A DNA stretch of 63,438 nucleotides, filler included, from Octopus bimaculoides (GCF_001194135.2; 4 parts of 3 records of this genome joined end to end with filler, not necessarily neighbours in it); one strand, 5' to 3'. Counted from the first letter of the whole stretch, positions 4,165-29,315 are shown. Notes: a model not told the origin generated them from the sequence alone. Program-made: numbers and translations.

Positions 4165-6375
4165 TCATAATCATTATTATTATTACCTCTTCATTATTGA
4201 GAAACAACAAATTCACAATTTCATTGAACAACCAGAAAAAAACAATGAAAAAGTAATTAAATAAATCAATCAATTAGACCACAAATAAAGAAAGAGAAAA
4301 AAGAAATTAAGGAAGAGAAAAAAGAAAAAAAGAAATAAAGGAAGAGAGAATGGAAGAAAGAAAGAAAGAAAGAAATATAACACAAACAAAAAAAAGCAAC
4401 TCATTTACAATAAATACAAAAATTCCATGAGGAAGTAGCAGGGCGATGAGGGAGGTGGTATTGGTGTTGTTGGTGGTGGTGGTGNNNNNNNNNNNNNNNN
4501 NNNNNNNNNNNNNNNNNNNNNNNNNNNNNNNNNNNNNNNNNNNNNNNNNNNNNNNNNNNNNNNNNNNNNNNNNNNNNNNNNNNNNNNNNNNNNNNNNNNN
4601 NNNNNNNNNNNNNNNNNNNNNNNNNNNNNNNNNNNNNNNNNNNNNNNNNNNNNNNNNNNNNNNNNNNNNNNNNNNNNNNNNNNNNNNNNNNNNNNNNNNN
4701 NNNNNNNNNNNNNNNNNNNNNNNNNNNNNNNNNNNNNNNNNNNNNNNNNNNNNNNNNNNNNNNNNNNNNNNNNNNNNNNNNNNNNNNNNNNNNNNNNNNN
4801 NNNNNNNNNNNNNNNNNNNNNNNNNNNNNNNNNNNNNNNNNNNNNNNNNNNNNNNNNNNNNNNNNNNNNNNNNNNNNNNNNNNNNNNNNNNNNNNNNNNN
4901 NNNNNNNNNNNNNNNNNNNNNNNNNNNNNNNNNNNNNNNNNNNNNNNNNNNNNNNNNNNNNNNNNNNNNNNNNNNNNNNNNNNNNNNNNNNNNNNNNNNN
5001 NNNNNNNNNNNNNNNNNNNNNNNNNNNNNNNNNNNNNNNNNNNNNNNNNNNNNNNNNNNNNNNNNNNGTTCATGGCTGGAATGCCTTCGATCATAGGCCT
5101 GCAACTACAACAACAATAGCAACAATAATGGCTACTAATATTAGCTTCATCATCATCATGAATGCTAAAGTTATCATCATCATTCTACCTCACCATCACC
5201 ACCACCACCACCACCACCACCACCACCACCACAATCACATATCATCATCAACACCATCATCATCATCATCATCATTGTTATCATTGTCATCATCAGTAAC
5301 ATTGCCATCACTTCTGCTGCTGTTACCACCCCTATTGTCCTTACCATTATCAATCTCATCAGCATCATTGTCATAATTGCACTCCCCACTACCCCTAAAT
5401 CCACTATCATCATCATCATCATCATCAATATCAACATCCTGACCATCACCACCACCACCAGTATCATCATCACCTCCACCATGGCCATCGTTCTCATCAC
5501 CATCATTACCATCACCAGCAGCAGCAGCAGCAGCACCACCACCACCACCACCACCACCTTCACAGTCATATTTCCCTTCTGGTGAGGATTGACTTGGTCT
5601 AGCATGCAGTTTATAACCTCAGTCTTATTATCATGGCATCTTCGAGACCCCAACATTCTGAGGCCAAATTACAACCTACCTATCCATATGGACGTAGGTC
5701 CACTATGCATAGGAAAAGGAAGGGGTGGTCACAGCTGGAGTATCTTTGTTTATTGGTCTACCAGATCACAGCTGAACTTCGGTAAAAGAACAACAATGAA
5801 ACCTATACATGGTTGTTCAGCTTCCTAATATTAGCAGTGAAGTCTCCCTTAAATCATACTGTATTGTCCAAACATAAATATTAGTTTCAAATTTTGGCAC
5901 AAGGCCACCAATTTCAGAGACTGAGTTAGTCGATTACATTGACCCCAGAGTTCAACTGGTACTTATTTTATCGACCCCAAAAGGATGGAAGGCAAAGTTG
6001 ACCTTGGTAGAATTTGAACTCAGAACGTAAAGAGAGACAAAATGCTGCTAAACATTTTGCCCAGCGTGCTAACAATTCTGTCAGTTCACCACCTTATGTC
6101 CAAACCTAAATATAGAAAGGTGGCAGATATATTGCAAGTGATAATCCTCACTGGAAGCTGGAATTTAGCAGGAGTCTAAAGTGAGGAGAGAAGCTGGGAT
6201 TTGCTTATGGTGAAAAGTATATGAAATGGAAAGAAAACAAAACACCATTGGCAGCCATACAAACAAGCAGAAAGTCCCTTCACAATTATGTAAGTTTTCA
6301 AGTCTTGATTGTCAAATCCAAACAGGTACGTCAATAAAGCATAAGTCACTTGAGACTTACACAAAACTTATAGAC

Positions 6376-6798
6376 TTAAGTGGCAAATATACTTCACCTT
6401 GTCATGCAGTTACTGTTAATACCTCGTTTAGAGATTTAACATTGCTTGTTTTCACTTTTTCGAGATCAGTGAATAATTTCACTGGAAAAAGTTATATATA
6501 TTTGCAAAGAAATATCTTTCGCATCGAAGGTCGGCGATTGTCGTACGCTGAGGACGGGAAAATACCCAGAAACTCGAGTCCGTACGTATCGCAGATCAAG
6601 ATGGGAAAGATAACTTCCCTTTGCAAATACAGACAGGACACAGATGTGTGTCGATAGCCAGCTGGAGGAGATGTTCTCCTGGGGCTAAAAGCAACAGTAA
6701 CATCCACCCTTAGGGGTCAGCCACATTTAAGTGGCAAATATACTTCACCTTGTCGTGCAGTTACTGTTAATACCTCGTTCAGAGATTTAACATTGCTT
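6376..6798 (+). mobile_element. Hammerhead-containing retroelement unit (non-LTR retrozyme-like or Penelope pseudo-LTR), about 1.2 monomers of 351 bp
   Basis: 72-bp direct repeat at 6376-6447 and 6727-6798 (2 mismatches, period 351). Flanking duplication CTTATAGACTTA at 6367-6378 and 6796-6807 partly overlaps the ends, so the TSD is 6-12 bp. Central hammerhead and many hairpins. Confidence 0.72.
6534..6592 (+). ncRNA. Type I hammerhead ribozyme motif (minimal, palindromic helix III)
   Basis: GCGAT-TGT-CGTACG (helix I), CTGAGGA core (6548-6554), C-GGG-AAAATA-CCC-A (helix II), GAAA, C-TCGA-G (helix III, palindrome CTCGAG), TC^ (predicted cut after 6580), CGTACG-T-ATCGC (helix I partner). Confidence 0.85.
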
Positions 6799-7862
6799 AT
6801 AGACTTATAGTTATGTAACTTCTTTTGTTCATATGATCAGTCATACATGCGTTTGTTTTAAGAACCATTCTTTTAATGTTAGCATTGTATGGATGAAGAG
6901 TGAAAAGAGGCAGGATTTTACAGCTGATGCTCTTCCGGTCACCATCCTTCACCTGTTTCAGGTAAGACACTTTTATATTCCACAAGTCTTCAAAATCACA
7001 GAATGACCAGTCATAATGTCAACAAGGAATGTCAACATTGGCATTGATTCACTTACATGATGACAAGCGAAATATCAACATTTATGCATATTCTTTATTT
7101 CACACACACATACACACATTCATGCATATAAATCTGCTTACTGCCAAGGTTACACCATTCACCTTTTTTTATAACTCTCATGCATCTATCACATATCTAT
7201 CTACTGTGTGATAGTTATCCATATCTCTTTCAGCTTACTTTTTTTTCACTCCCGCTTCCTTGCTCATCTCTCAGTTCTTCTTCTTCTTCTGAGGGAGCTC
7301 AGATTGGAGGAAAATGGAGAAAAATTGTTAATGGCCTATTCTTCATAAGGAGTAAAGGGAATCACCATTTCAGACTACCCAGTTCTTCAACCATTCCATA
7401 TTATATATCCCTCTCATTATCATCATTCATGCTTCTCATTCTATAAAGAGACTGGTAAGAAAGGAGAGGTGAGGTTTTGAGATTCCTTACATCATGTTGA
7501 GGATATGGCTATTGCTCTAGTGCCAGAACCAGGAAAAATGTACCCAGTATACTCTGTACAGTGTGAGATTGTGAGGGTCCTTAAGCCATGCGGAGGACAT
7601 GACAATTTTCTCATGCTAGTGGCATAAAAGAAAAGTGCACAATACATTCTATAAAGTGATTGGTATTAAGATGAGCATCCAACCATAGAAACCAGGCTAA
7701 AAATTGAGAATGTGAGTAAGATTAGGTACTCCATACAACCACATTTAGGTGAGCAGAACCCTCAAATTCATGCTGACACTGCCTGTGAAGGCCAACCCAA
7801 TTAATGCCAGCATGAAGAGTGGTAGTAAAATGATAATTATATATGTATATAAATGTGTGTGC

Positions 7863-7906
<44 letters not shown>

Positions 7907-8133
7907 NNNNNNNNNNNNNNNNNNNNNNNNNNNNNNNNNNNNNNNNNNNNNNNNNNNNNNNNNNNNNNNNNNNNNNNNNNNNNNNNNNNNNNNNNNNNNN
8001 NNNNNNNNNNNNNNNNNNNNNNNNNNNNNNNNNNNNNNNNNNNNNNNNNNNNNNNNNNNNNNNNNNNNNNNNNNNNNNNNNNATAGGGATAATTTCGAAA
8101 GGGAATGAAAAATAAAAACATTTACCAATCTAT

Positions 8134-8379: not shown

Positions 8380-8780
8380 ATATATATATAGTTCGAAGTT
8401 TCAGGTATGGAAACAAGGTCTAGAATCAAAGGGCCTTAGAGTTAACCCTGCACAAGTCTTAGTAAGTAAGAAGGCAGACAAATCACAAATCCCTGCTCTA
8501 TCTGTAGAAAAGGCATAGGTAGAAACTCCATAAGATGTACTTGGTGTAAGCTATGGACACATAAGAGGTGCAGCAATATCAGAAGTTTAATAGGGAAAAT
8601 AGCTTTCAGGTGTGGAAAATGCACAGGTACGATAGACAACGAAAATGTACAGAAAATAGACTCCATCATCTACCAGTGGGGTAATCTAGAGGTAGTAGAC
8701 AGCTTCTGTCATCTAGGTGACCAAGTTAGTAGCAGAGGTGGATGCTCCAAGAACGTAGCTGTGAGAATAAGAATAGTCGT
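8380..8780 (+). mobile_element. RTE-clade LINE RT fragment
   Basis: Degenerate match to the same family (LEVVDSFCHLGDQVSSRGGCS..VAVRIRI). Confidence 0.7.
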
Positions 8781-9016
8781 GTCATGCAAATGGCACGTAA
8801 AAGTACCCATTAGACTCTTGTAGCAGTTGGTGTTAGGAAGGGCATCCAGCCATAGAAACCATGCCAAATCAGACTGGAGTCTGATGCAACCTTCCAGCTT
8901 CTAGCCCTGGTCAAATCATCCAACCCATGCCAGCATGGATAACAGACGTTAAGTGATAATGATGATGATGATGATGATGAGAGTTAGTATATATTTATTT
9001 TATTTTTAGTTAGGTA

Positions 9017-9735: not shown

Positions 9736-10149
9736 TAATTAAGACAGAACTTATAAATATTACTGGAAAAAAAATCCATATAGCAATAATACTGCTCCAA
9801 TTAATACAAATAGTGATGCGTGAGCGAGTGTGCGTGTGTGTATGTGTGTATGTGTGTGTGTGCGTGTATGTGTGTGTGTGTGCGTGTGTGTGTATGTGTG
9901 TGTGCGTGCGTGTGTGTGCGTGCGCGCATACCTCCGTGTGTGTATGTGCATGCGTACGTCGTCTATGCGTATGCTTGTGCGTGCGTGTGTGAGTGCATGC
10001 GCACTTGTGTATCTATATATGCATGTGTAAATATACACACACACACATATATATTTAGAGAGAGAGAGAGAGAGATTATGACTATATTATATATTACGCG
10101 CGCACGCGTATGCGTGCGTACGTGTGTCTGTGTGTGTGTGTGCGTGTGA

Positions 10150-25494: not shown

Positions 25495-26220
25495 CTGCTG
25501 AGGTCAACTTTACCTTTCATCCTTTTGGGGTCAATAAAATAAGTACCAGCTGAATACTGGGAGCAAATATTATCAACTTACCCACTCCCTTCAAAATTGC
25601 TGGCCTTGTGCCAAAATTCTAAGCCAATATTTATATGCATCCTATATGAATAAATATTTTACTATTCCGGAGAAGGAGTACTCATCAAAGATTTCATTTA
25701 AACAGAAATGAGCTTTTATCAAATGAAAATCAACATATCTGATTGTCATGAGATACTGAACTTGTGTGTTTAGTTTCACATTCAATATTTTGAATATTCT
25801 GCCAAGGTCAACTTTCCCTTTCATTCTTTTAGCGTCAATAAAGTAAATACCAGTTGAACACTGGAGTCGATGTAATTGACTTATCGCTCCCTCAAAATAT
25901 CTGGCCTTGTGCCAAAACTAATATTTTTATGCATACTATATAAATAAATATTCTGCTACCAATAAAAAGATGTACTCATCAGAAATTGCATCTAAACAGA
26001 AATGAACTTTTAAGAAATTAAAATCAACATTTCTGATTGTCACTAGACAGTTTTTACATTCAATATTTTGAGTCAATATTCCACCAAGACTGACTTTGCC
26101 TTTCATCCTTTCAGGGTCAGTAAAATAGGCACCAGTTGAGCATTGGGGGTCAATGTAATCAGCTTATCTCACTTCCTTGAAATTGCCAGCCTTGTGCCAA
26201 AATTTGAAACCAATATTTTG
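25495..26220 (+). repeat. Degenerate tandem array of an approximately 290-bp unit (SINE family C 3' half + AT-rich spacer), about 2.5 copies
   Basis: GCCTTGTGCCAAAA occurs three times (about 25600, 25905, 26190). The spacer AATCAACAT.TCTGATTGTCA...TTCACATTCAATATTTTG occurs twice. Confidence 0.75.
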
Positions 26221-27682: not shown

Positions 27683-27714
<32 letters not shown>

Positions 27715-28269
27715 NNNNNNNNNNNNNNNNNNNNNNNNNNNNNNNNNNNNNNNNNNNNNNNNNNNNNNNNNNNNNNNNNNNNNNNNNNNNNNNNNNNNNN
27801 NNNNNNNNNNNNNNNNNNNNNNNNNNNNNNNNNNNNNNNNNNNNNNNNNNNNNNNNNNNNNNNNNNNNNNNNNNNNNNNNNNNNNNNNNNNNNNNNNNNN
27901 NNNNNNNNNNNNNNNNNNNNNNNNNNNNNNNNNNNNNNNNNNNNNNNNNNNNNNNNNNNNNNNNNNNNNNNNNNNNNNNNNNNNNNNNNNNNNNNNNNNN
28001 NNNNNNNNNNNNNNNNNNNNNNNNNNNNNNNNNNNNNNNNNNNNNNNNNNNNNNNNNNNNNNNNNNNNNNNNNNNNNNNNNNNNNNNNNNNNNNNNNNNN
28101 NNNNNNNNNNNNNNNNNNNNNNNNNNNNNNNNNNNNNNNNNNNNNNNNNNNNNNNNNNNNNNNNNNNNNNNNNNNNNNNNNNNNNNNNNNNNNTATAGAT
28201 ACATACATATACATATATACATATATATGTATGTATATAAATATATATATAGAATATATAGACTGTATG

Positions 28270-29315
28270 ACGCATTTGTGTAAACAGCCATGCTACATGG
28301 CAGAGAAACATGGGCCGTGACTGCTGAGGACATGCGTAAGCTTGCAAGGAATGAAGCCAGTATGCTCTGCTGGATGTGTAATGTCAGTGTGCATACACGA
28401 CAGAGTGTAAGTGCCCTGAGAGTAAAGTTGGATTTAAGAAGCATGAGATGTGGTGTGCAAGAGAAACGACTGTGCTGGTATGGTCATGTGTTGCATATGA
28501 ATAAGGACAACTGTGTGAAAAAGTGTTACACCCTAGCAGTTGAGGGAACCTGTGGAAGAGGTAGACCCAGGAAAACCTGGGATGAGGTAATGAAGCACGA
28601 CCTTCGAACATTGGGCCTTACCTAGGCAATGACTAGTGACTGGGACCTTTGGAAATATGCAGTAGGTGAGAAGACCTGACAAGCCAAGTAAGACCATAGT
28701 CCATGGCCTATGCCAGTGGGTGTAACCAGCCCATCTACGAATACCCCTCATTCATTGGACAATAAACCTTGCTTGTGAAGACCTATTGAGGCAAGTGTAA
28801 ACAAATCAAAATCGCTGACATGGCCGATGACTGTACCGCCTGATTGGCACTTGTGCCAGTGGAACATTAAAAGCACATCCAAGCATGATCGTTGCCAGGG
28901 CCATGGATTGGCTGCTATGCTGGTGACATGTGAAAGGCACCATTTGAGCTTGATCATTGCCAGTGTTGCCTTACTGGCACATGTGCTGGTGGCACGTGAA
29001 AAACAACATTTGAGCATAGTTTTTGCCAGTGCCGCTGGACTGGCTCCATTAGGTAGCACATAAAAACACCTTTTGAGCGTGATCGTTGCCAAAACCACCT
29101 AACTGGCCCTCATGCCAGTGGCATGTAAAAGCACCCATTACACTCTTGGAGTGCTTGGCATTAGGAAGGGCATGTAGCTGTAGAAACTTTGCCAGCTCAG
29201 ATTGAGCCTGGTGCAGCCTCTGGCTCACCAGTCCTCAGACAAACCGTTGAACCTATGCCAGTATGGAAAGTGGACATTAAATGATGATGATAAAGGTGAT
29301 GATGATGATGATGAT
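28270..29315 (+). mobile_element. RTE-clade LINE 3' end with long 3' UTR and (ATG)n tail
   Basis: MLHG.ETWAVTAEDMRKLARNEASML...RL.WYGHV...GRGRPRKTWDEV C-terminal RT motifs, followed by about 630 nt of UTR ending in GGACATTAAATGATGATG. Confidence 0.88.

What the first reader, a model, noticed from the sequence alone, without database searches (positions are those of the whole stretch)
6367..6807. Retrozyme-like insertion: 351-nt hammerhead-bearing unit present as 1.2 copies between target-site duplications
Seen in sequence: a 72-bp direct repeat with period 351, a flanking 6-12 bp duplication (CTTATAGACTTA), no credible ORF, and a complete type I hammerhead at the centre (CTGAGGA...GAAA-C-TCGA-G-TC^). 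Established knowledge: non-LTR retrozymes of animals are small non-coding repeats carrying type I hammerheads, accumulate as circular RNA and are thought to be mobilised by Penelope-like elements; Penelope pseudo-LTRs carry similar ribozymes. Inference: a monomer-plus-fraction insertion is what reverse transcription running past its start on a circular or multimeric RNA would leave. I cannot tell whether such a family has been described in octopus.
Basis: partly seen in the sequence, partly recalled or inferred. Interest (0 to 1): 0.88.

Follow-up and report, generated by a model that had tools for sequence, protein, structure and literature searches.

The report
Hammerhead-ribozyme retroelement insertion in octopus DNA
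A 351-base non-coding mobile element carrying a self-cleaving hammerhead ribozyme sits as about 1.2 head-to-tail copies between duplicated target bases in an octopus-type genome; it is a new example of an already described kind of element (animal "retrozymes"), not a new kind.

Summary
A 72-nt direct repeat (70/72 identical, period 351) and an exact 12-bp flanking duplication bracket a 417-423-bp non-coding insert. The insert carries one complete type I hammerhead, with the predicted cut after 6580.

A structural descriptor expects about 0.002 such motifs by chance in the whole piece. Rfam Hammerhead_1 aligns end to end but below threshold (20 vs 34 bits). Textbook hammerheads with the same helix III, found in metagenomes, also miss that threshold.

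The ribozyme has the canonical metazoan layout: helix I 6 bp, helix II 4 positions with one C.A mismatch, and helix III 2 bp plus a palindromic UCGA loop. Two copies can pair through an 8-bp ACUCGAGU helix. The unit folds far better than shuffles (z about -7).

No ORF, RT, GIY-YIG, tRNA head or LTR features are present. The host is an octopod, and Penelope-like elements are annotated in Octopus vulgaris.

Best reading: a non-LTR-retrozyme-type insertion copied from an RNA longer than one unit (circular or multimeric).

Not testable here: copy number in the genome, conservation, expression and cleavage. The gap-rich assembly may also have collapsed a longer array.

Verdict: a new member of a known kind, of moderate-to-low interest.

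The parts
6367..6378 (.). Left copy of the target-site duplication CTTATAGACTTA. The unambiguous core is ATAGAC 6370-6375. The last 3 nt (TTA) could equally be the first bases of the element.
6376..6798 (+). Whole insert as defined by homology: 423 nt, or 417 nt (6379-6795) if the duplication is 12 bp. That is about 1.2 head-to-tail copies of a 351-nt unit.
6376..6726 (+). One full 351-nt unit: 41.9% GC, 14 CpG (observed/expected 0.91), no coding capacity with relatives. Linear fold -117.8 kcal/mol (z -7.6); circular fold -112.4 kcal/mol (z -6.75, 60% paired).
6376..6447 (+). 5' copy of the 72-nt terminal direct repeat (a miniature pseudo-LTR).
6727..6798 (+). 3' copy of the 72-nt terminal direct repeat (start of the second unit), 70/72 identical to the first.
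6499..6629 (+). Long hairpin arm with the hammerhead at its tip. Helix I is extended by the pairings 6534-6538/6588-6592, 6513-6525/6600-6612 and 6499-6509/6619-6629. Of the 14 CpGs, 11 lie in 6520-6590.
   Evidence: (I7, I8)
6542..6586 (+). Type I hammerhead ribozyme, 45 nt. Helix I is 6542-6547 / 6581-6586; the core is CUGAGGA 6548-6554; helix II is CGGG/CCCA with loop AAAAUA, 6555-6568 (C6555.A6568 mismatch); GAAA is 6569-6572; helix III is AC/GU plus the UCGA loop, 6572-6579; C17 is 6580. The predicted cut is between 6580 and 6581.
6572..6579 (+). Palindrome ACUCGAGU (helix III plus loop 3). In a cofold of two ribozyme domains it forms an 8-bp intermolecular helix III, the double-hammerhead conformation.
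   Evidence: PMC4209133 for the principle
6796..6807 (.). Right copy of the target-site duplication CTTATAGACTTA. The unambiguous core is ATAGAC 6799-6804. The first 3 nt (CTT) could equally be the last bases of the element.

Best explanation
This is a retrotransposed copy of a small non-coding, hammerhead-bearing retroelement of the animal non-LTR retrozyme type, inserted in an octopod genome. SHOWN: a 351-nt unit is present as about 1.2 head-to-tail copies, bounded by a 6-12-bp target-site duplication. It carries one canonical metazoan type I hammerhead on the + strand at the tip of a long hairpin. It has no ORF with relatives, no RT or endonuclease, no tRNA head and no LTR/PBS/PPT features. 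INFERRED: the + strand RNA was the transposition intermediate. Reverse transcription was primed on a nicked target, with 3-nt microhomology CTT at the right junction. It began at an internal position of the unit (about unit position 69-72), ran once through the intact ribozyme cut site (6580|6581) and ended about 1.2 units later, with microhomology TTA. The insert ends are not at the cut site and the insert exceeds one unit, so the template must have been longer than a monomer with a sealed 6580/6581 junction. That means either a ligated circular RNA copied by rolling-circle reverse transcription or an uncleaved multimeric transcript of a tandem master array. The evidence does not separate these two. 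The weak 2-bp helix III with a palindromic loop implies that the ribozyme cleaves mainly as a dimer in multimeric transcripts and stays silent in the monomeric circle. The likeliest supplier of RT and endonuclease is a Penelope-like element. This is inferred from the literature and from the pseudo-LTR-like partial-tandem layout. Such elements are annotated in Octopus vulgaris, but none lies within about 5 kb of this locus. As assembled, this copy has a single ribozyme and cannot release a unit-length RNA, so it is a dead-end offspring copy. It is fairly young: 2 differences in 72 nt between its repeats, an identical duplication, and CpGs largely intact.
For: Repeat and duplication. Hammerhead well beyond chance: 0.002 expected per 26 kb. 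Rfam RF00163 gives a full-length alignment, 20 bits, E 0.0056 on 77 nt. The segment lengths match the Rfam consensus one for one (6 / CUGANGA / 4+6+4 / GAAAC / 4 / GUC / 6), and loop 2 AAAAUA compares with consensus CAAAUA. Yardstick: about 18 clear hammerheads with the same GAAACUCGAGUC in metagenomic contigs also miss the Rfam gathering score, and only L003 passes, at 34.9. Double-hammerhead cofold with an 8-bp helix III, -44.9 kcal/mol. Fold z of -7.6 linear and -6.75 circular, similar to the L003 hammerhead unit at -6.3. CpG observed/expected is 0.91, against 0.33 for the rest of the piece, 0.18 for the flanks and 0.28 in an O. vulgaris sample. No tRNA; no Pfam domain in nearby open segments. 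Host is an octopod. An unrelated hammerhead element shows the same unit-plus-fraction layout: L016, 174-bp repeat at period 1091. Literature: definition of non-LTR retrozymes and larger TSDs (PMC7229834); canonical vs minimal hammerheads and dimer logic (PMC4209133); PLE partial tandems, variable TSD and non-autonomous derivatives (PMC8557442); dispersed monomers and relation to PLE pseudo-LTRs (10.64898/2026.07.22.740005); PLE families in O. vulgaris (PMC13282606).
Against: Only one copy is available. No relative of the unit was found in the window, in 40 kb of O. vulgaris and Argonauta DNA, in metagenome, viral or prokaryotic collections, or as a called ORF. None of these collections is suited to finding octopod repeats, so this is absence of a test, not a negative result. 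Rfam scores the ribozyme below its gathering threshold. Helix II has a C.A mismatch at 10.1/11.1, so this copy may cleave poorly. The CpG excess is only at about the 95th percentile of 351-nt tiles and is concentrated in the GC-rich ribozyme arm. No RNA or cleavage data exist. The PLE link is by analogy only.
Confidence: 0.75

Rival explanations
1. Same kind of element, but the locus really holds a longer tandem array (2.2, 3.2 ... copies) that a short-read assembler collapsed to one pass through the repeat. In that case the locus would carry two or more ribozymes and could itself release unit-length RNA.
For: The piece has 2975 N in many gaps next to microsatellites, typical of short-read scaffolds. 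A tandem array entered at unit position 1 and left at position 72 collapses to exactly 0.2 or 1.2 copies. Non-LTR retrozymes are typically tandem (PMC7229834).
Against: The two 72-nt copies differ at two sites, so the assembler did keep first and last copies apart. No N gap lies inside 6367-6807. Dispersed monomer-type copies are common in other animals.
Confidence: 0.2
2. It is a fragment of an autonomous Penelope-like element: a heavily 5'-truncated partial tandem or solo pseudo-LTR, whose terminal region happens to contain this sequence.
For: PLE insertions are often 5'-truncated partial tandems with variable TSDs, and their pseudo-LTRs carry hammerheads (PMC8557442, PMC4209133). Retrozyme consensus sequences in Xenopus match PLE termini. 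PLEs exist in Octopus.
Against: The repeat period is 351 nt, not the 3-4 kb of a PLE unit, so the template was periodic at 351 nt. No RT or GIY-YIG lies between the duplications or within about 5 kb. The ribozyme is the canonical type (helix I 6 bp, helix II 4, helix III 2 bp plus palindromic loop). It is not the metazoan PLE min-HHR, which has helix II 7-8 bp, helix I 4-5 bp and no helix III. Cephalopod Naiad PLEs lack hammerheads.
Confidence: 0.1
3. It is a remnant of a satellite or tandem array shaped by DNA-level events (unequal crossing-over, deletion, segmental duplication), and the flanking 12-bp identity is coincidental.
For: Hammerhead repeats were first known as satellite DNAs (newt, Schistosoma), and the window is rich in tandem repeats.
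Against: The flanking duplication abuts both ends exactly and is the only 12-nt match at that spacing among 23,268 positions; even a 6-nt match occurs at 8e-4. Element boundaries are sharp, with CpG observed/expected 0.91 inside vs 0.18 in the flanks. No other unit fragments are nearby.
Confidence: 0.04
4. The hammerhead is a chance look-alike, or a decayed and inactive motif in an unrelated repeat.
For: It is below the Rfam gathering score (20 vs 34 bits; no hit at all in the wider scans). There is a C.A mismatch at the base of helix II. No conservation data exist.
Against: The descriptor expects 0.002 per 26 kb, or about 1e-5 for a given 351-nt stretch on one strand. Every segment length equals the canonical one. 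Helix I is extended by about 30 further base pairs. Genuine hammerheads with the same helix III also fail the Rfam threshold. Axolotl retrozyme ribozymes with a U.U mismatch at the base of helix II still cleave as dimers (PMC7229834).
Confidence: 0.03

Closest known systems
[quoted passage not shown]
   Same: Unit size (351 nt, close to the axolotl 330/350-nt units), low GC (42%), non-coding, and a canonical type I hammerhead. Helix III of 2 bp plus a tetraloop is like the invertebrate and Amex2 motifs. There is a mismatch at the base of helix II, as in Amex2. Other shared features are head-to-tail continuity, a TSD longer than 4 bp, and strong RNA self-structure.
   Different: Only 1.2 copies and one ribozyme at this locus, rather than dimers to multimers. 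No sequence similarity to any retrieved hammerhead element outside the core. Expression, circularity and copy number are unknown. No report for cephalopods was found in the searchable literature.
Monomer derivatives of non-LTR retrozymes (Li, Clavereau & Pollet 2026 preprint, 10.64898/2026.07.22.740005)
   Same: A dispersed copy with a single ribozyme away from arrays, read as non-transposing offspring of active tandem copies, with a proposed dependence on Penelope-like elements.
   Different: That work covers vertebrates plus a few insects and one coral. Junction anatomy (TSD, microhomology, unit-plus-fraction) is not described in the sections read.
Penelope-like elements and their non-autonomous derivatives (Craig et al. 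2021, PMC8557442; Cervera & de la Pena 2014, PMC4209133)
   Same: A partial-tandem insertion gives terminal direct repeats (pseudo-LTRs), the TSD length is variable, and the repeats are associated with a hammerhead.
   Different: No RT/GIY-YIG ORF, a period of 351 nt instead of kilobases, and a 72-nt repeat that lacks the ribozyme. The ribozyme is the canonical type, not the PLE min-HHR. There is no inverted 5'-truncated copy and no 30-40-bp tail.
Satellite-type hammerhead repeats (newt satellite 2, Schistosoma Sm-alpha; Rfam RF00163 Hammerhead_1)
   Same: The same 45-nt architecture segment by segment, loop 2 AAAUA, and a palindromic loop 3 allowing the double-hammerhead.
   Different: Helix sequences differ and the Rfam score is below gathering (20 vs 34 bits). 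It is not a long array here.
Plant LTR retrozymes (Cervera et al. 2016, PMC4918200)
   Same: A non-autonomous retroelement whose RNA is cut by hammerheads and circularised, with terminal direct repeats.
   Different: The plant elements have type III hammerheads inside roughly 350-bp LTRs, PBS and PPT, 4-bp TSDs, GC >55% and 600-1000-nt circles. None of these holds here.

Membership tests
Non-LTR retrozyme (animal) | Type I hammerhead with complete catalytic core (CUGANGA, GAAA, UH cut site) and helices I-III | tested here: met
   Descriptor hit at 6542-6586, 0.002 expected by chance per 26 kb; full-length Rfam RF00163 alignment.
Non-LTR retrozyme (animal) | Canonical metazoan architecture: helix I about 6 bp, helix II 4 bp, helix III 1-2 bp capped by a 2-4-nt palindromic loop (PMC4209133) | tested here: met
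   Helix I is 6 bp. Helix II is 3 bp plus a C.A at 10.1/11.1. Helix III is 2 bp plus UCGA. The one mismatch is noted.
Non-LTR retrozyme (animal) | Short unit (about 150-450 bp), low GC (<45-50%), non-coding, no LTR/PBS/PPT | tested here: met
   351 nt and 41.9% GC. No relatives for the longest frame. No Pfam hit. No tRNA or PBS-like feature (and sequence reading).
Non-LTR retrozyme (animal) | Head-to-tail tandem copies (dimers to multimers), so that two ribozymes flank a unit | tested here: inconclusive
   Head-to-tail continuity is present, but only 1.2 copies and one ribozyme. The gap-rich assembly may have collapsed copies. Monomer derivatives are accepted in the 2026 preprint.
Non-LTR retrozyme (animal) | Target-site duplications, when present, longer than the 4 bp of plant retrozymes | tested here: met
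   6-12 bp.
Non-LTR retrozyme (animal) | Multi-copy family in the host genome with a conserved ribozyme | not testable with these tools
   No eukaryotic genome collection is searchable by DNA. Indirect routes failed.
Non-LTR retrozyme (animal) | Expression as linear and circular RNA of unit length; self-cleavage | not testable with these tools
   Needs RNA-seq, Northern blots and in vitro transcription.
Penelope-like element / solo pseudo-LTR | RT plus GIY-YIG ORF between or next to the repeats | tested here: not met
   417-423 nt between the duplications with no such ORF. Open segments within about 5 kb give no RT or GIY-YIG.
Penelope-like element / solo pseudo-LTR | Metazoan PLE min-HHR (helix II 7-8 bp, helix I 4-5 bp, no helix III), located inside the pseudo-LTR | tested here: not met
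   The motif is canonical, and it lies in the unique part, not in the 72-nt repeat.
Penelope-like element / solo pseudo-LTR | Partial-tandem insertion with terminal direct repeats and a TSD of variable length | tested here: met
   72-nt terminal repeat plus a 6-12-bp TSD. This shows that it works like a PLE-type insertion, not that it is a PLE.
Penelope-like element / solo pseudo-LTR | Sequence similarity of the unit to the terminus of a PLE of the same genome | not testable with these tools
   No octopod PLE consensus library is available here.
Rfam RF00163 Hammerhead_1 | Bit score at or above the curated gathering score (34) | tested here: not met
   20 bits and no hit in wider scans. The threshold is also missed by about 18 clear hammerheads used as a yardstick.
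Plant LTR retrozyme | Type III hammerheads within LTRs, PBS, PPT, 4-bp TSD | tested here: not met
   Type I motif outside the repeats. No PBS next to 6448 or PPT before 6726. TSD is 6-12 bp.
SINE | Pol III head derived from tRNA/5S/7SL and a simple-repeat or A-rich tail | tested here: not met
   ARAGORN finds nothing in 5800-7400. The element ends in ...AACATTG(CTT) with no tail.

The most novel reading that the evidence does not exclude
This is a young copy of a still-active retrozyme family of octopods, a group in which none has been reported. Its roughly 351-nt circular RNA would be reverse-transcribed by rolling circle, starting internally by microhomology. The junctions of this insert would then be a direct genomic footprint of the circular intermediate, and of Penelope-type target-primed integration acting in trans. 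A more remote variant is that the frame with 116 of 117 codons open reflects translation of the circle.
Probability: 0.3. Interest if true: 0.55.

Novelty: new member of a known kind. Interest (0 to 1): 0.35.

Why it matters
How animal retrozymes move is still inferred rather than shown. The circular RNA, the rolling-circle reverse transcription and the Penelope-like helper are all proposals. A clean, young insertion with both junctions readable is the kind of datum that constrains that model. Here the insert is more than one unit long, its ends lie away from the ribozyme cut site, and there is 3-nt microhomology at each end. A genome-wide collection of such junctions in octopods could show whether initiation sites are random around the circle, as expected for a circular template, or fixed, as expected for a linear multimer. 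It would also extend retrozymes to cephalopods, whose repeat-rich genomes and brain-expressed retroelements are under active study. On its own, one copy adds a lineage to a known class and does not change the picture.

Tried and rejected
1. Exact look-ups of ORFs crossing the element (6226-6657 +, 6492-6707 -) and of a LINE ORF found nothing on record.

2. A protein search with the 116-codon open frame of the circularised unit gave 14 word-sharing candidates, none significant. I ran no further search on minus-strand frames because the prior chance of success was low.

3. DNA pattern scans:
- The family-specific hammerhead pattern found nothing in metagenome contigs.
- The generic pattern found 81 loci, none related to the unit outside the core.
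- Viral and prokaryotic genome collections gave nothing.

4. Sequence strings of the ribozyme in full-text papers and in the supplements of PMC7229834 and PMC13282606 gave nothing relevant. One broad literature query was badly targeted and uninformative.

5. A search for a paralogous empty site in the window failed. The flank repeat (5874-6096, copies at 25.4-26.2 kb) ends about 270 bp before the insertion site.

6. A sample of 40 kb of O. vulgaris and Argonauta chromosome DNA held no copy, as expected for so little sequence.

I replaced them with selected open segments.

8. My first descriptor script wrongly rejected the palindromic helix III and reported a shifted parse. It was corrected.

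9. I looked for a TSD around the comparator element in L016 and saw none clearly.

10. I rejected the coding reading: a frame with one stop or fewer occurs in 3.8% of shuffles and has no homologues.

11. I rejected using the CpG excess as strong evidence of youth. It is only at the 95th percentile and is concentrated in GC-rich stems.
Full report
OBSERVATION.
- The segments 6376-6447 and 6727-6798 are a 72-nt direct repeat, 70/72 identical, with start-to-start spacing of 351.
- CTTATAGACTTA occurs exactly at 6367-6378 and 6796-6807.
- The outer three bases of each 12-mer overlap the ends of the 72-nt repeat. The target-site duplication is therefore between 6 bp (ATAGAC, unambiguous) and 12 bp, and the insert is 417-423 nt, or 1.19-1.20 units.
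- At the same spacing elsewhere in the piece, a 6-nt flank match occurs at 8e-4 of positions. The only 12-nt match among 23,268 positions is this one.
- The two repeat copies differ at 6404/6755 (CAT vs CGT) and 6429/6780.
- No other copy of the unit lies in the 29-kb piece.

THE RIBOZYME. On the + strand the parts are:
- helix I, 5' strand: CGUACG, 6542-6547
- core: CUGAGGA, 6548-6554
- helix II: CGGG / loop AAAAUA / CCCA, 6555-6568
- GAAA: 6569-6572
- helix III: AC / loop UCGA / GU, 6572-6579
- cut-site nucleotide: C17 at 6580
- helix I, 3' strand: CGUACG, 6581-6586

My first descriptor script mis-handled the palindromic helix III. The corrected one finds this motif and no other in the piece. 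Across 1500 dinucleotide-preserving shuffles it expects 0.002 motifs of this quality per 26 kb on both strands.

Rfam gives no hit at gathering scores on the whole piece, nor at E<=10 on 601 nt. When the 77-nt stretch is scanned alone, RF00163 Hammerhead_1 aligns over its full length (1-45) to 6542-6586 at 20 bits, against a gathering score of 34, with E 0.0056.

To judge that shortfall I scanned metagenome contigs for any CUGANGA-N12-16-GAAACUCGAGUC. About 20 of the 82 matches are clear type I hammerheads, with 5-7-bp helix I and 4-5-bp helix II. Only the two in L003 reach the Rfam threshold, at 34.9 bits. A sub-threshold score is therefore not evidence against a hammerhead of this type.

Segment by segment the motif has the lengths of the Rfam consensus. 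Its loop 2 (AAAAUA) differs by one base from the consensus CAAAUA.

It also matches the published definition of the canonical metazoan type I hammerhead: helix I 6 bp, helix II 4 bp, and helix III 1-2 bp capped by a 2-4-nt palindromic loop (PMC4209133).

The one blemish is a C.A opposition at the base of helix II (6555/6568). It could be a CpG-to-CpA decay of this copy, which is inference only. Axolotl retrozyme ribozymes with a U.U mismatch at the same place still cleave as dimers (PMC7229834).

ACUCGAGU (6572-6579) is a perfect palindrome. Two ribozyme domains cofold into a double hammerhead with an 8-bp intermolecular helix III, at -44.9 kcal/mol. This is the classical arrangement: cleavage in multimeric RNA and silence in the monomer.

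THE UNIT AS AN RNA.
- The 351-nt unit folds to -117.8 kcal/mol, against -81.4 +/- 4.8 for shuffles (z -7.6).
- As a circle opened at the cut site it folds to -112.4 kcal/mol (z -6.75, 60% paired).
- A bona fide hammerhead unit from a metagenome (L003, 662 nt, assembled with an exact 613-nt terminal redundancy) gives z -6.3.
- The hammerhead sits at the tip of a long arm in which helix I is continued by three further helices (6534-6538/6588-6592, 6513-6525/6600-6612, 6499-6509/6619-6629).
- No other Rfam family matches either strand.

WHAT IT IS NOT.
- Not coding. A 143-codon ORF reads in from the flank, and one frame of the circular unit has a single stop. Such a frame appears in 3.8% of shuffles, and its translation has no relatives among 5.8 billion clusters and no Pfam match.
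- Not a SINE. There is no tRNA-like head and no tail.
- Not an LTR element. There is no PBS after 6447 and no PPT before 6727, the ribozyme lies outside the repeats, and the TSD exceeds 4 bp.
- Not attached to a Penelope-like ORF. Nothing coding lies between the duplications, and the open segments within about 5 kb give only weak zinc-finger matches typical of LINE debris.

HOST AND SURROUNDINGS.
- A LINE-derived ORF at 18554-18901 has its best relatives in Octopus bimaculoides (76%), O. vulgaris (82% over half its length) and Argonauta hians.
- The window shares many interspersed repeats with an O. vulgaris chromosome sample at 65-90% identity.
- The piece is AT-rich (38% GC without N), full of microsatellites and has 2975 N.
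- It is strongly CpG-depleted: observed/expected 0.33 overall, 0.18 in the flanks, and 0.28 in the O. vulgaris sample. The unit has 14 CpGs (0.91). This fits a fairly recent insertion, but only weakly. The value is at about the 95th percentile of tiles, and 11 of the 14 CpGs lie in the GC-rich ribozyme arm.

MECHANISM. Shown: an insert of 1.2 units with a TSD, whose ends lie at unit positions about 1-4 and about 69-72, while the ribozyme cut site is at unit position 205 and is crossed once without interruption.

It follows directly that the template was not a ribozyme-cleaved linear monomer, because the ends of such a monomer would lie at 6580/6581. The template was longer than one unit, with that junction sealed. 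It was either a ligated circle copied past its starting point or an uncleaved multimer from a tandem master locus. The data cannot separate these two.

Inferred: target-primed reverse transcription of the + strand RNA, with 3-nt microhomologies (CTT on the right, TTA on the left) at initiation and resolution.

The enzyme source is inferred from the literature. Penelope-like elements insert as partial tandems that create pseudo-LTRs with TSDs of variable length, and they have non-autonomous derivatives that do the same (PMC8557442). Retrozymes co-occur with such elements and are related to their pseudo-LTRs (10.64898/2026.07.22.740005). Thirty-one Penelope-like families are listed among the putatively active elements of O. 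vulgaris (PMC13282606).

An unrelated hammerhead element found in one metagenome family shows the same unit-plus-fraction layout: L016, with a 174-bp repeat at period 1091 around one ribozyme.

As assembled, this copy has one ribozyme and cannot release a unit-length RNA. It would be a dead-end offspring copy, like the dispersed monomers described in vertebrates.

CAVEATS AND RIVALS.
- The main caveat is that only one copy is available. No tool here searches eukaryotic genomes by DNA. All indirect routes were negative but carry little weight. The ENA assemblies that do carry octopod repeats are low-coverage metagenomes in which only very abundant repeats assemble.
- A second caveat is the assembly. 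A short-read assembler can collapse an n.2-copy array to 1.2 copies, so the copy number is a lower bound. This would not change the class, only whether the locus is itself a source.
- The Penelope fragment or solo pseudo-LTR reading is disfavoured by the 351-nt period, the missing ORF and the canonical rather than minimal ribozyme. A sequence relation to a Penelope terminus remains untested.
- A DNA-level satellite remnant is disfavoured by the exact flanking duplication and the sharp boundaries.
- A chance motif is disfavoured by the descriptor statistics and the surrounding structure.

COMPARISON AND NOVELTY. The element works like, and by every testable criterion belongs with, the animal non-LTR retrozymes (PMC7229834). 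The tandem criterion is inconclusive at this locus, and the family-level, expression and cleavage criteria are untestable here.

I found no paper on hammerhead ribozymes or retrozymes in octopus or other cephalopods in the searchable library. The recent O. vulgaris repeat annotation does not mention them. Subscription literature is not covered.

This is a new member of a known kind. A specialist would not be surprised, since such elements are widespread in metazoans including molluscs. The modest added value is a cleanly bounded young insert whose junctions bear on the still-unproven rolling-circle model.

Scores: interest 0.35; confidence in the main reading 0.75.

Noticed in passing
L003 (Ga0049110_10014201) 1-1275: A 662-nt unit assembled with an exact 613-nt terminal redundancy. 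It has one type I hammerhead per unit (Rfam 34.9 bits), no ORF above 87 codons and a circular fold z of -6.3. It looks like a circular or tandem hammerhead RNA (retrozyme- or viroid-like) in an environmental sample.
   Followed up: partly
L010, L012, L016, L018, L024, L027, L031, L035, L044, L052, L058, L063, L064, L077-L080 (Ga0126336 and Ga0099820), plus L047 (Ga0126342), which matches only across the roughly 55-nt ribozyme: About 18 dispersed copies of a 0.9-1.1-kb element carrying AGGAGCAA-CUGAUGAGGUUCACUGAAGAACC-GAAACUCGAGUC-UUGCUUGA. L016 (174-bp repeat, period 1091) and L080 (229-bp repeat, period 1428) show a unit-plus-fraction layout. These clear hammerheads all miss the Rfam Hammerhead_1 gathering score. 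The host of the sample was not identified.
   Followed up: partly
window 25494-26042, 5874-6096; L082 3473-3926: An octopus interspersed repeat of about 220-290 bp. It is present as a 294-bp-period tandem (1.8 copies), as an inverted copy about 270 bp upstream of the insertion, and in O. vulgaris. It is probably a SINE-like family.
   Followed up: no
window 14557-15218, 17131-17895, 18058-18922, 28284-28622, 8470-8820: Degenerate non-LTR (LINE) retrotransposon fragments: RVT_1 at 17605-17898, and zinc-finger and C-terminal pieces. Relatives are annotated as uncharacterised proteins in O. bimaculoides, O. vulgaris and Argonauta hians.
   Followed up: partly
window 6376-6726, frame +0 of the circularised unit: 116 of 117 codons are open (single TAG at 6655-6657). 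This happens in 3.8% of shuffles, and the translation has no relatives. It is probably chance.
   Followed up: yes
window 9750-10000: A CpG-rich (GTGTGCGT)-type microsatellite block with CpG observed/expected up to 1.67, in an otherwise strongly CpG-depleted piece.
   Followed up: no
window, many sites (e.g. about 4440-5070, 7910-8080, 16400-16890, 27710-28190): Runs of N next to microsatellites, 2975 N in all. This is the signature of a short-read scaffold, so tandem copy numbers in this piece are lower bounds.
   Followed up: no
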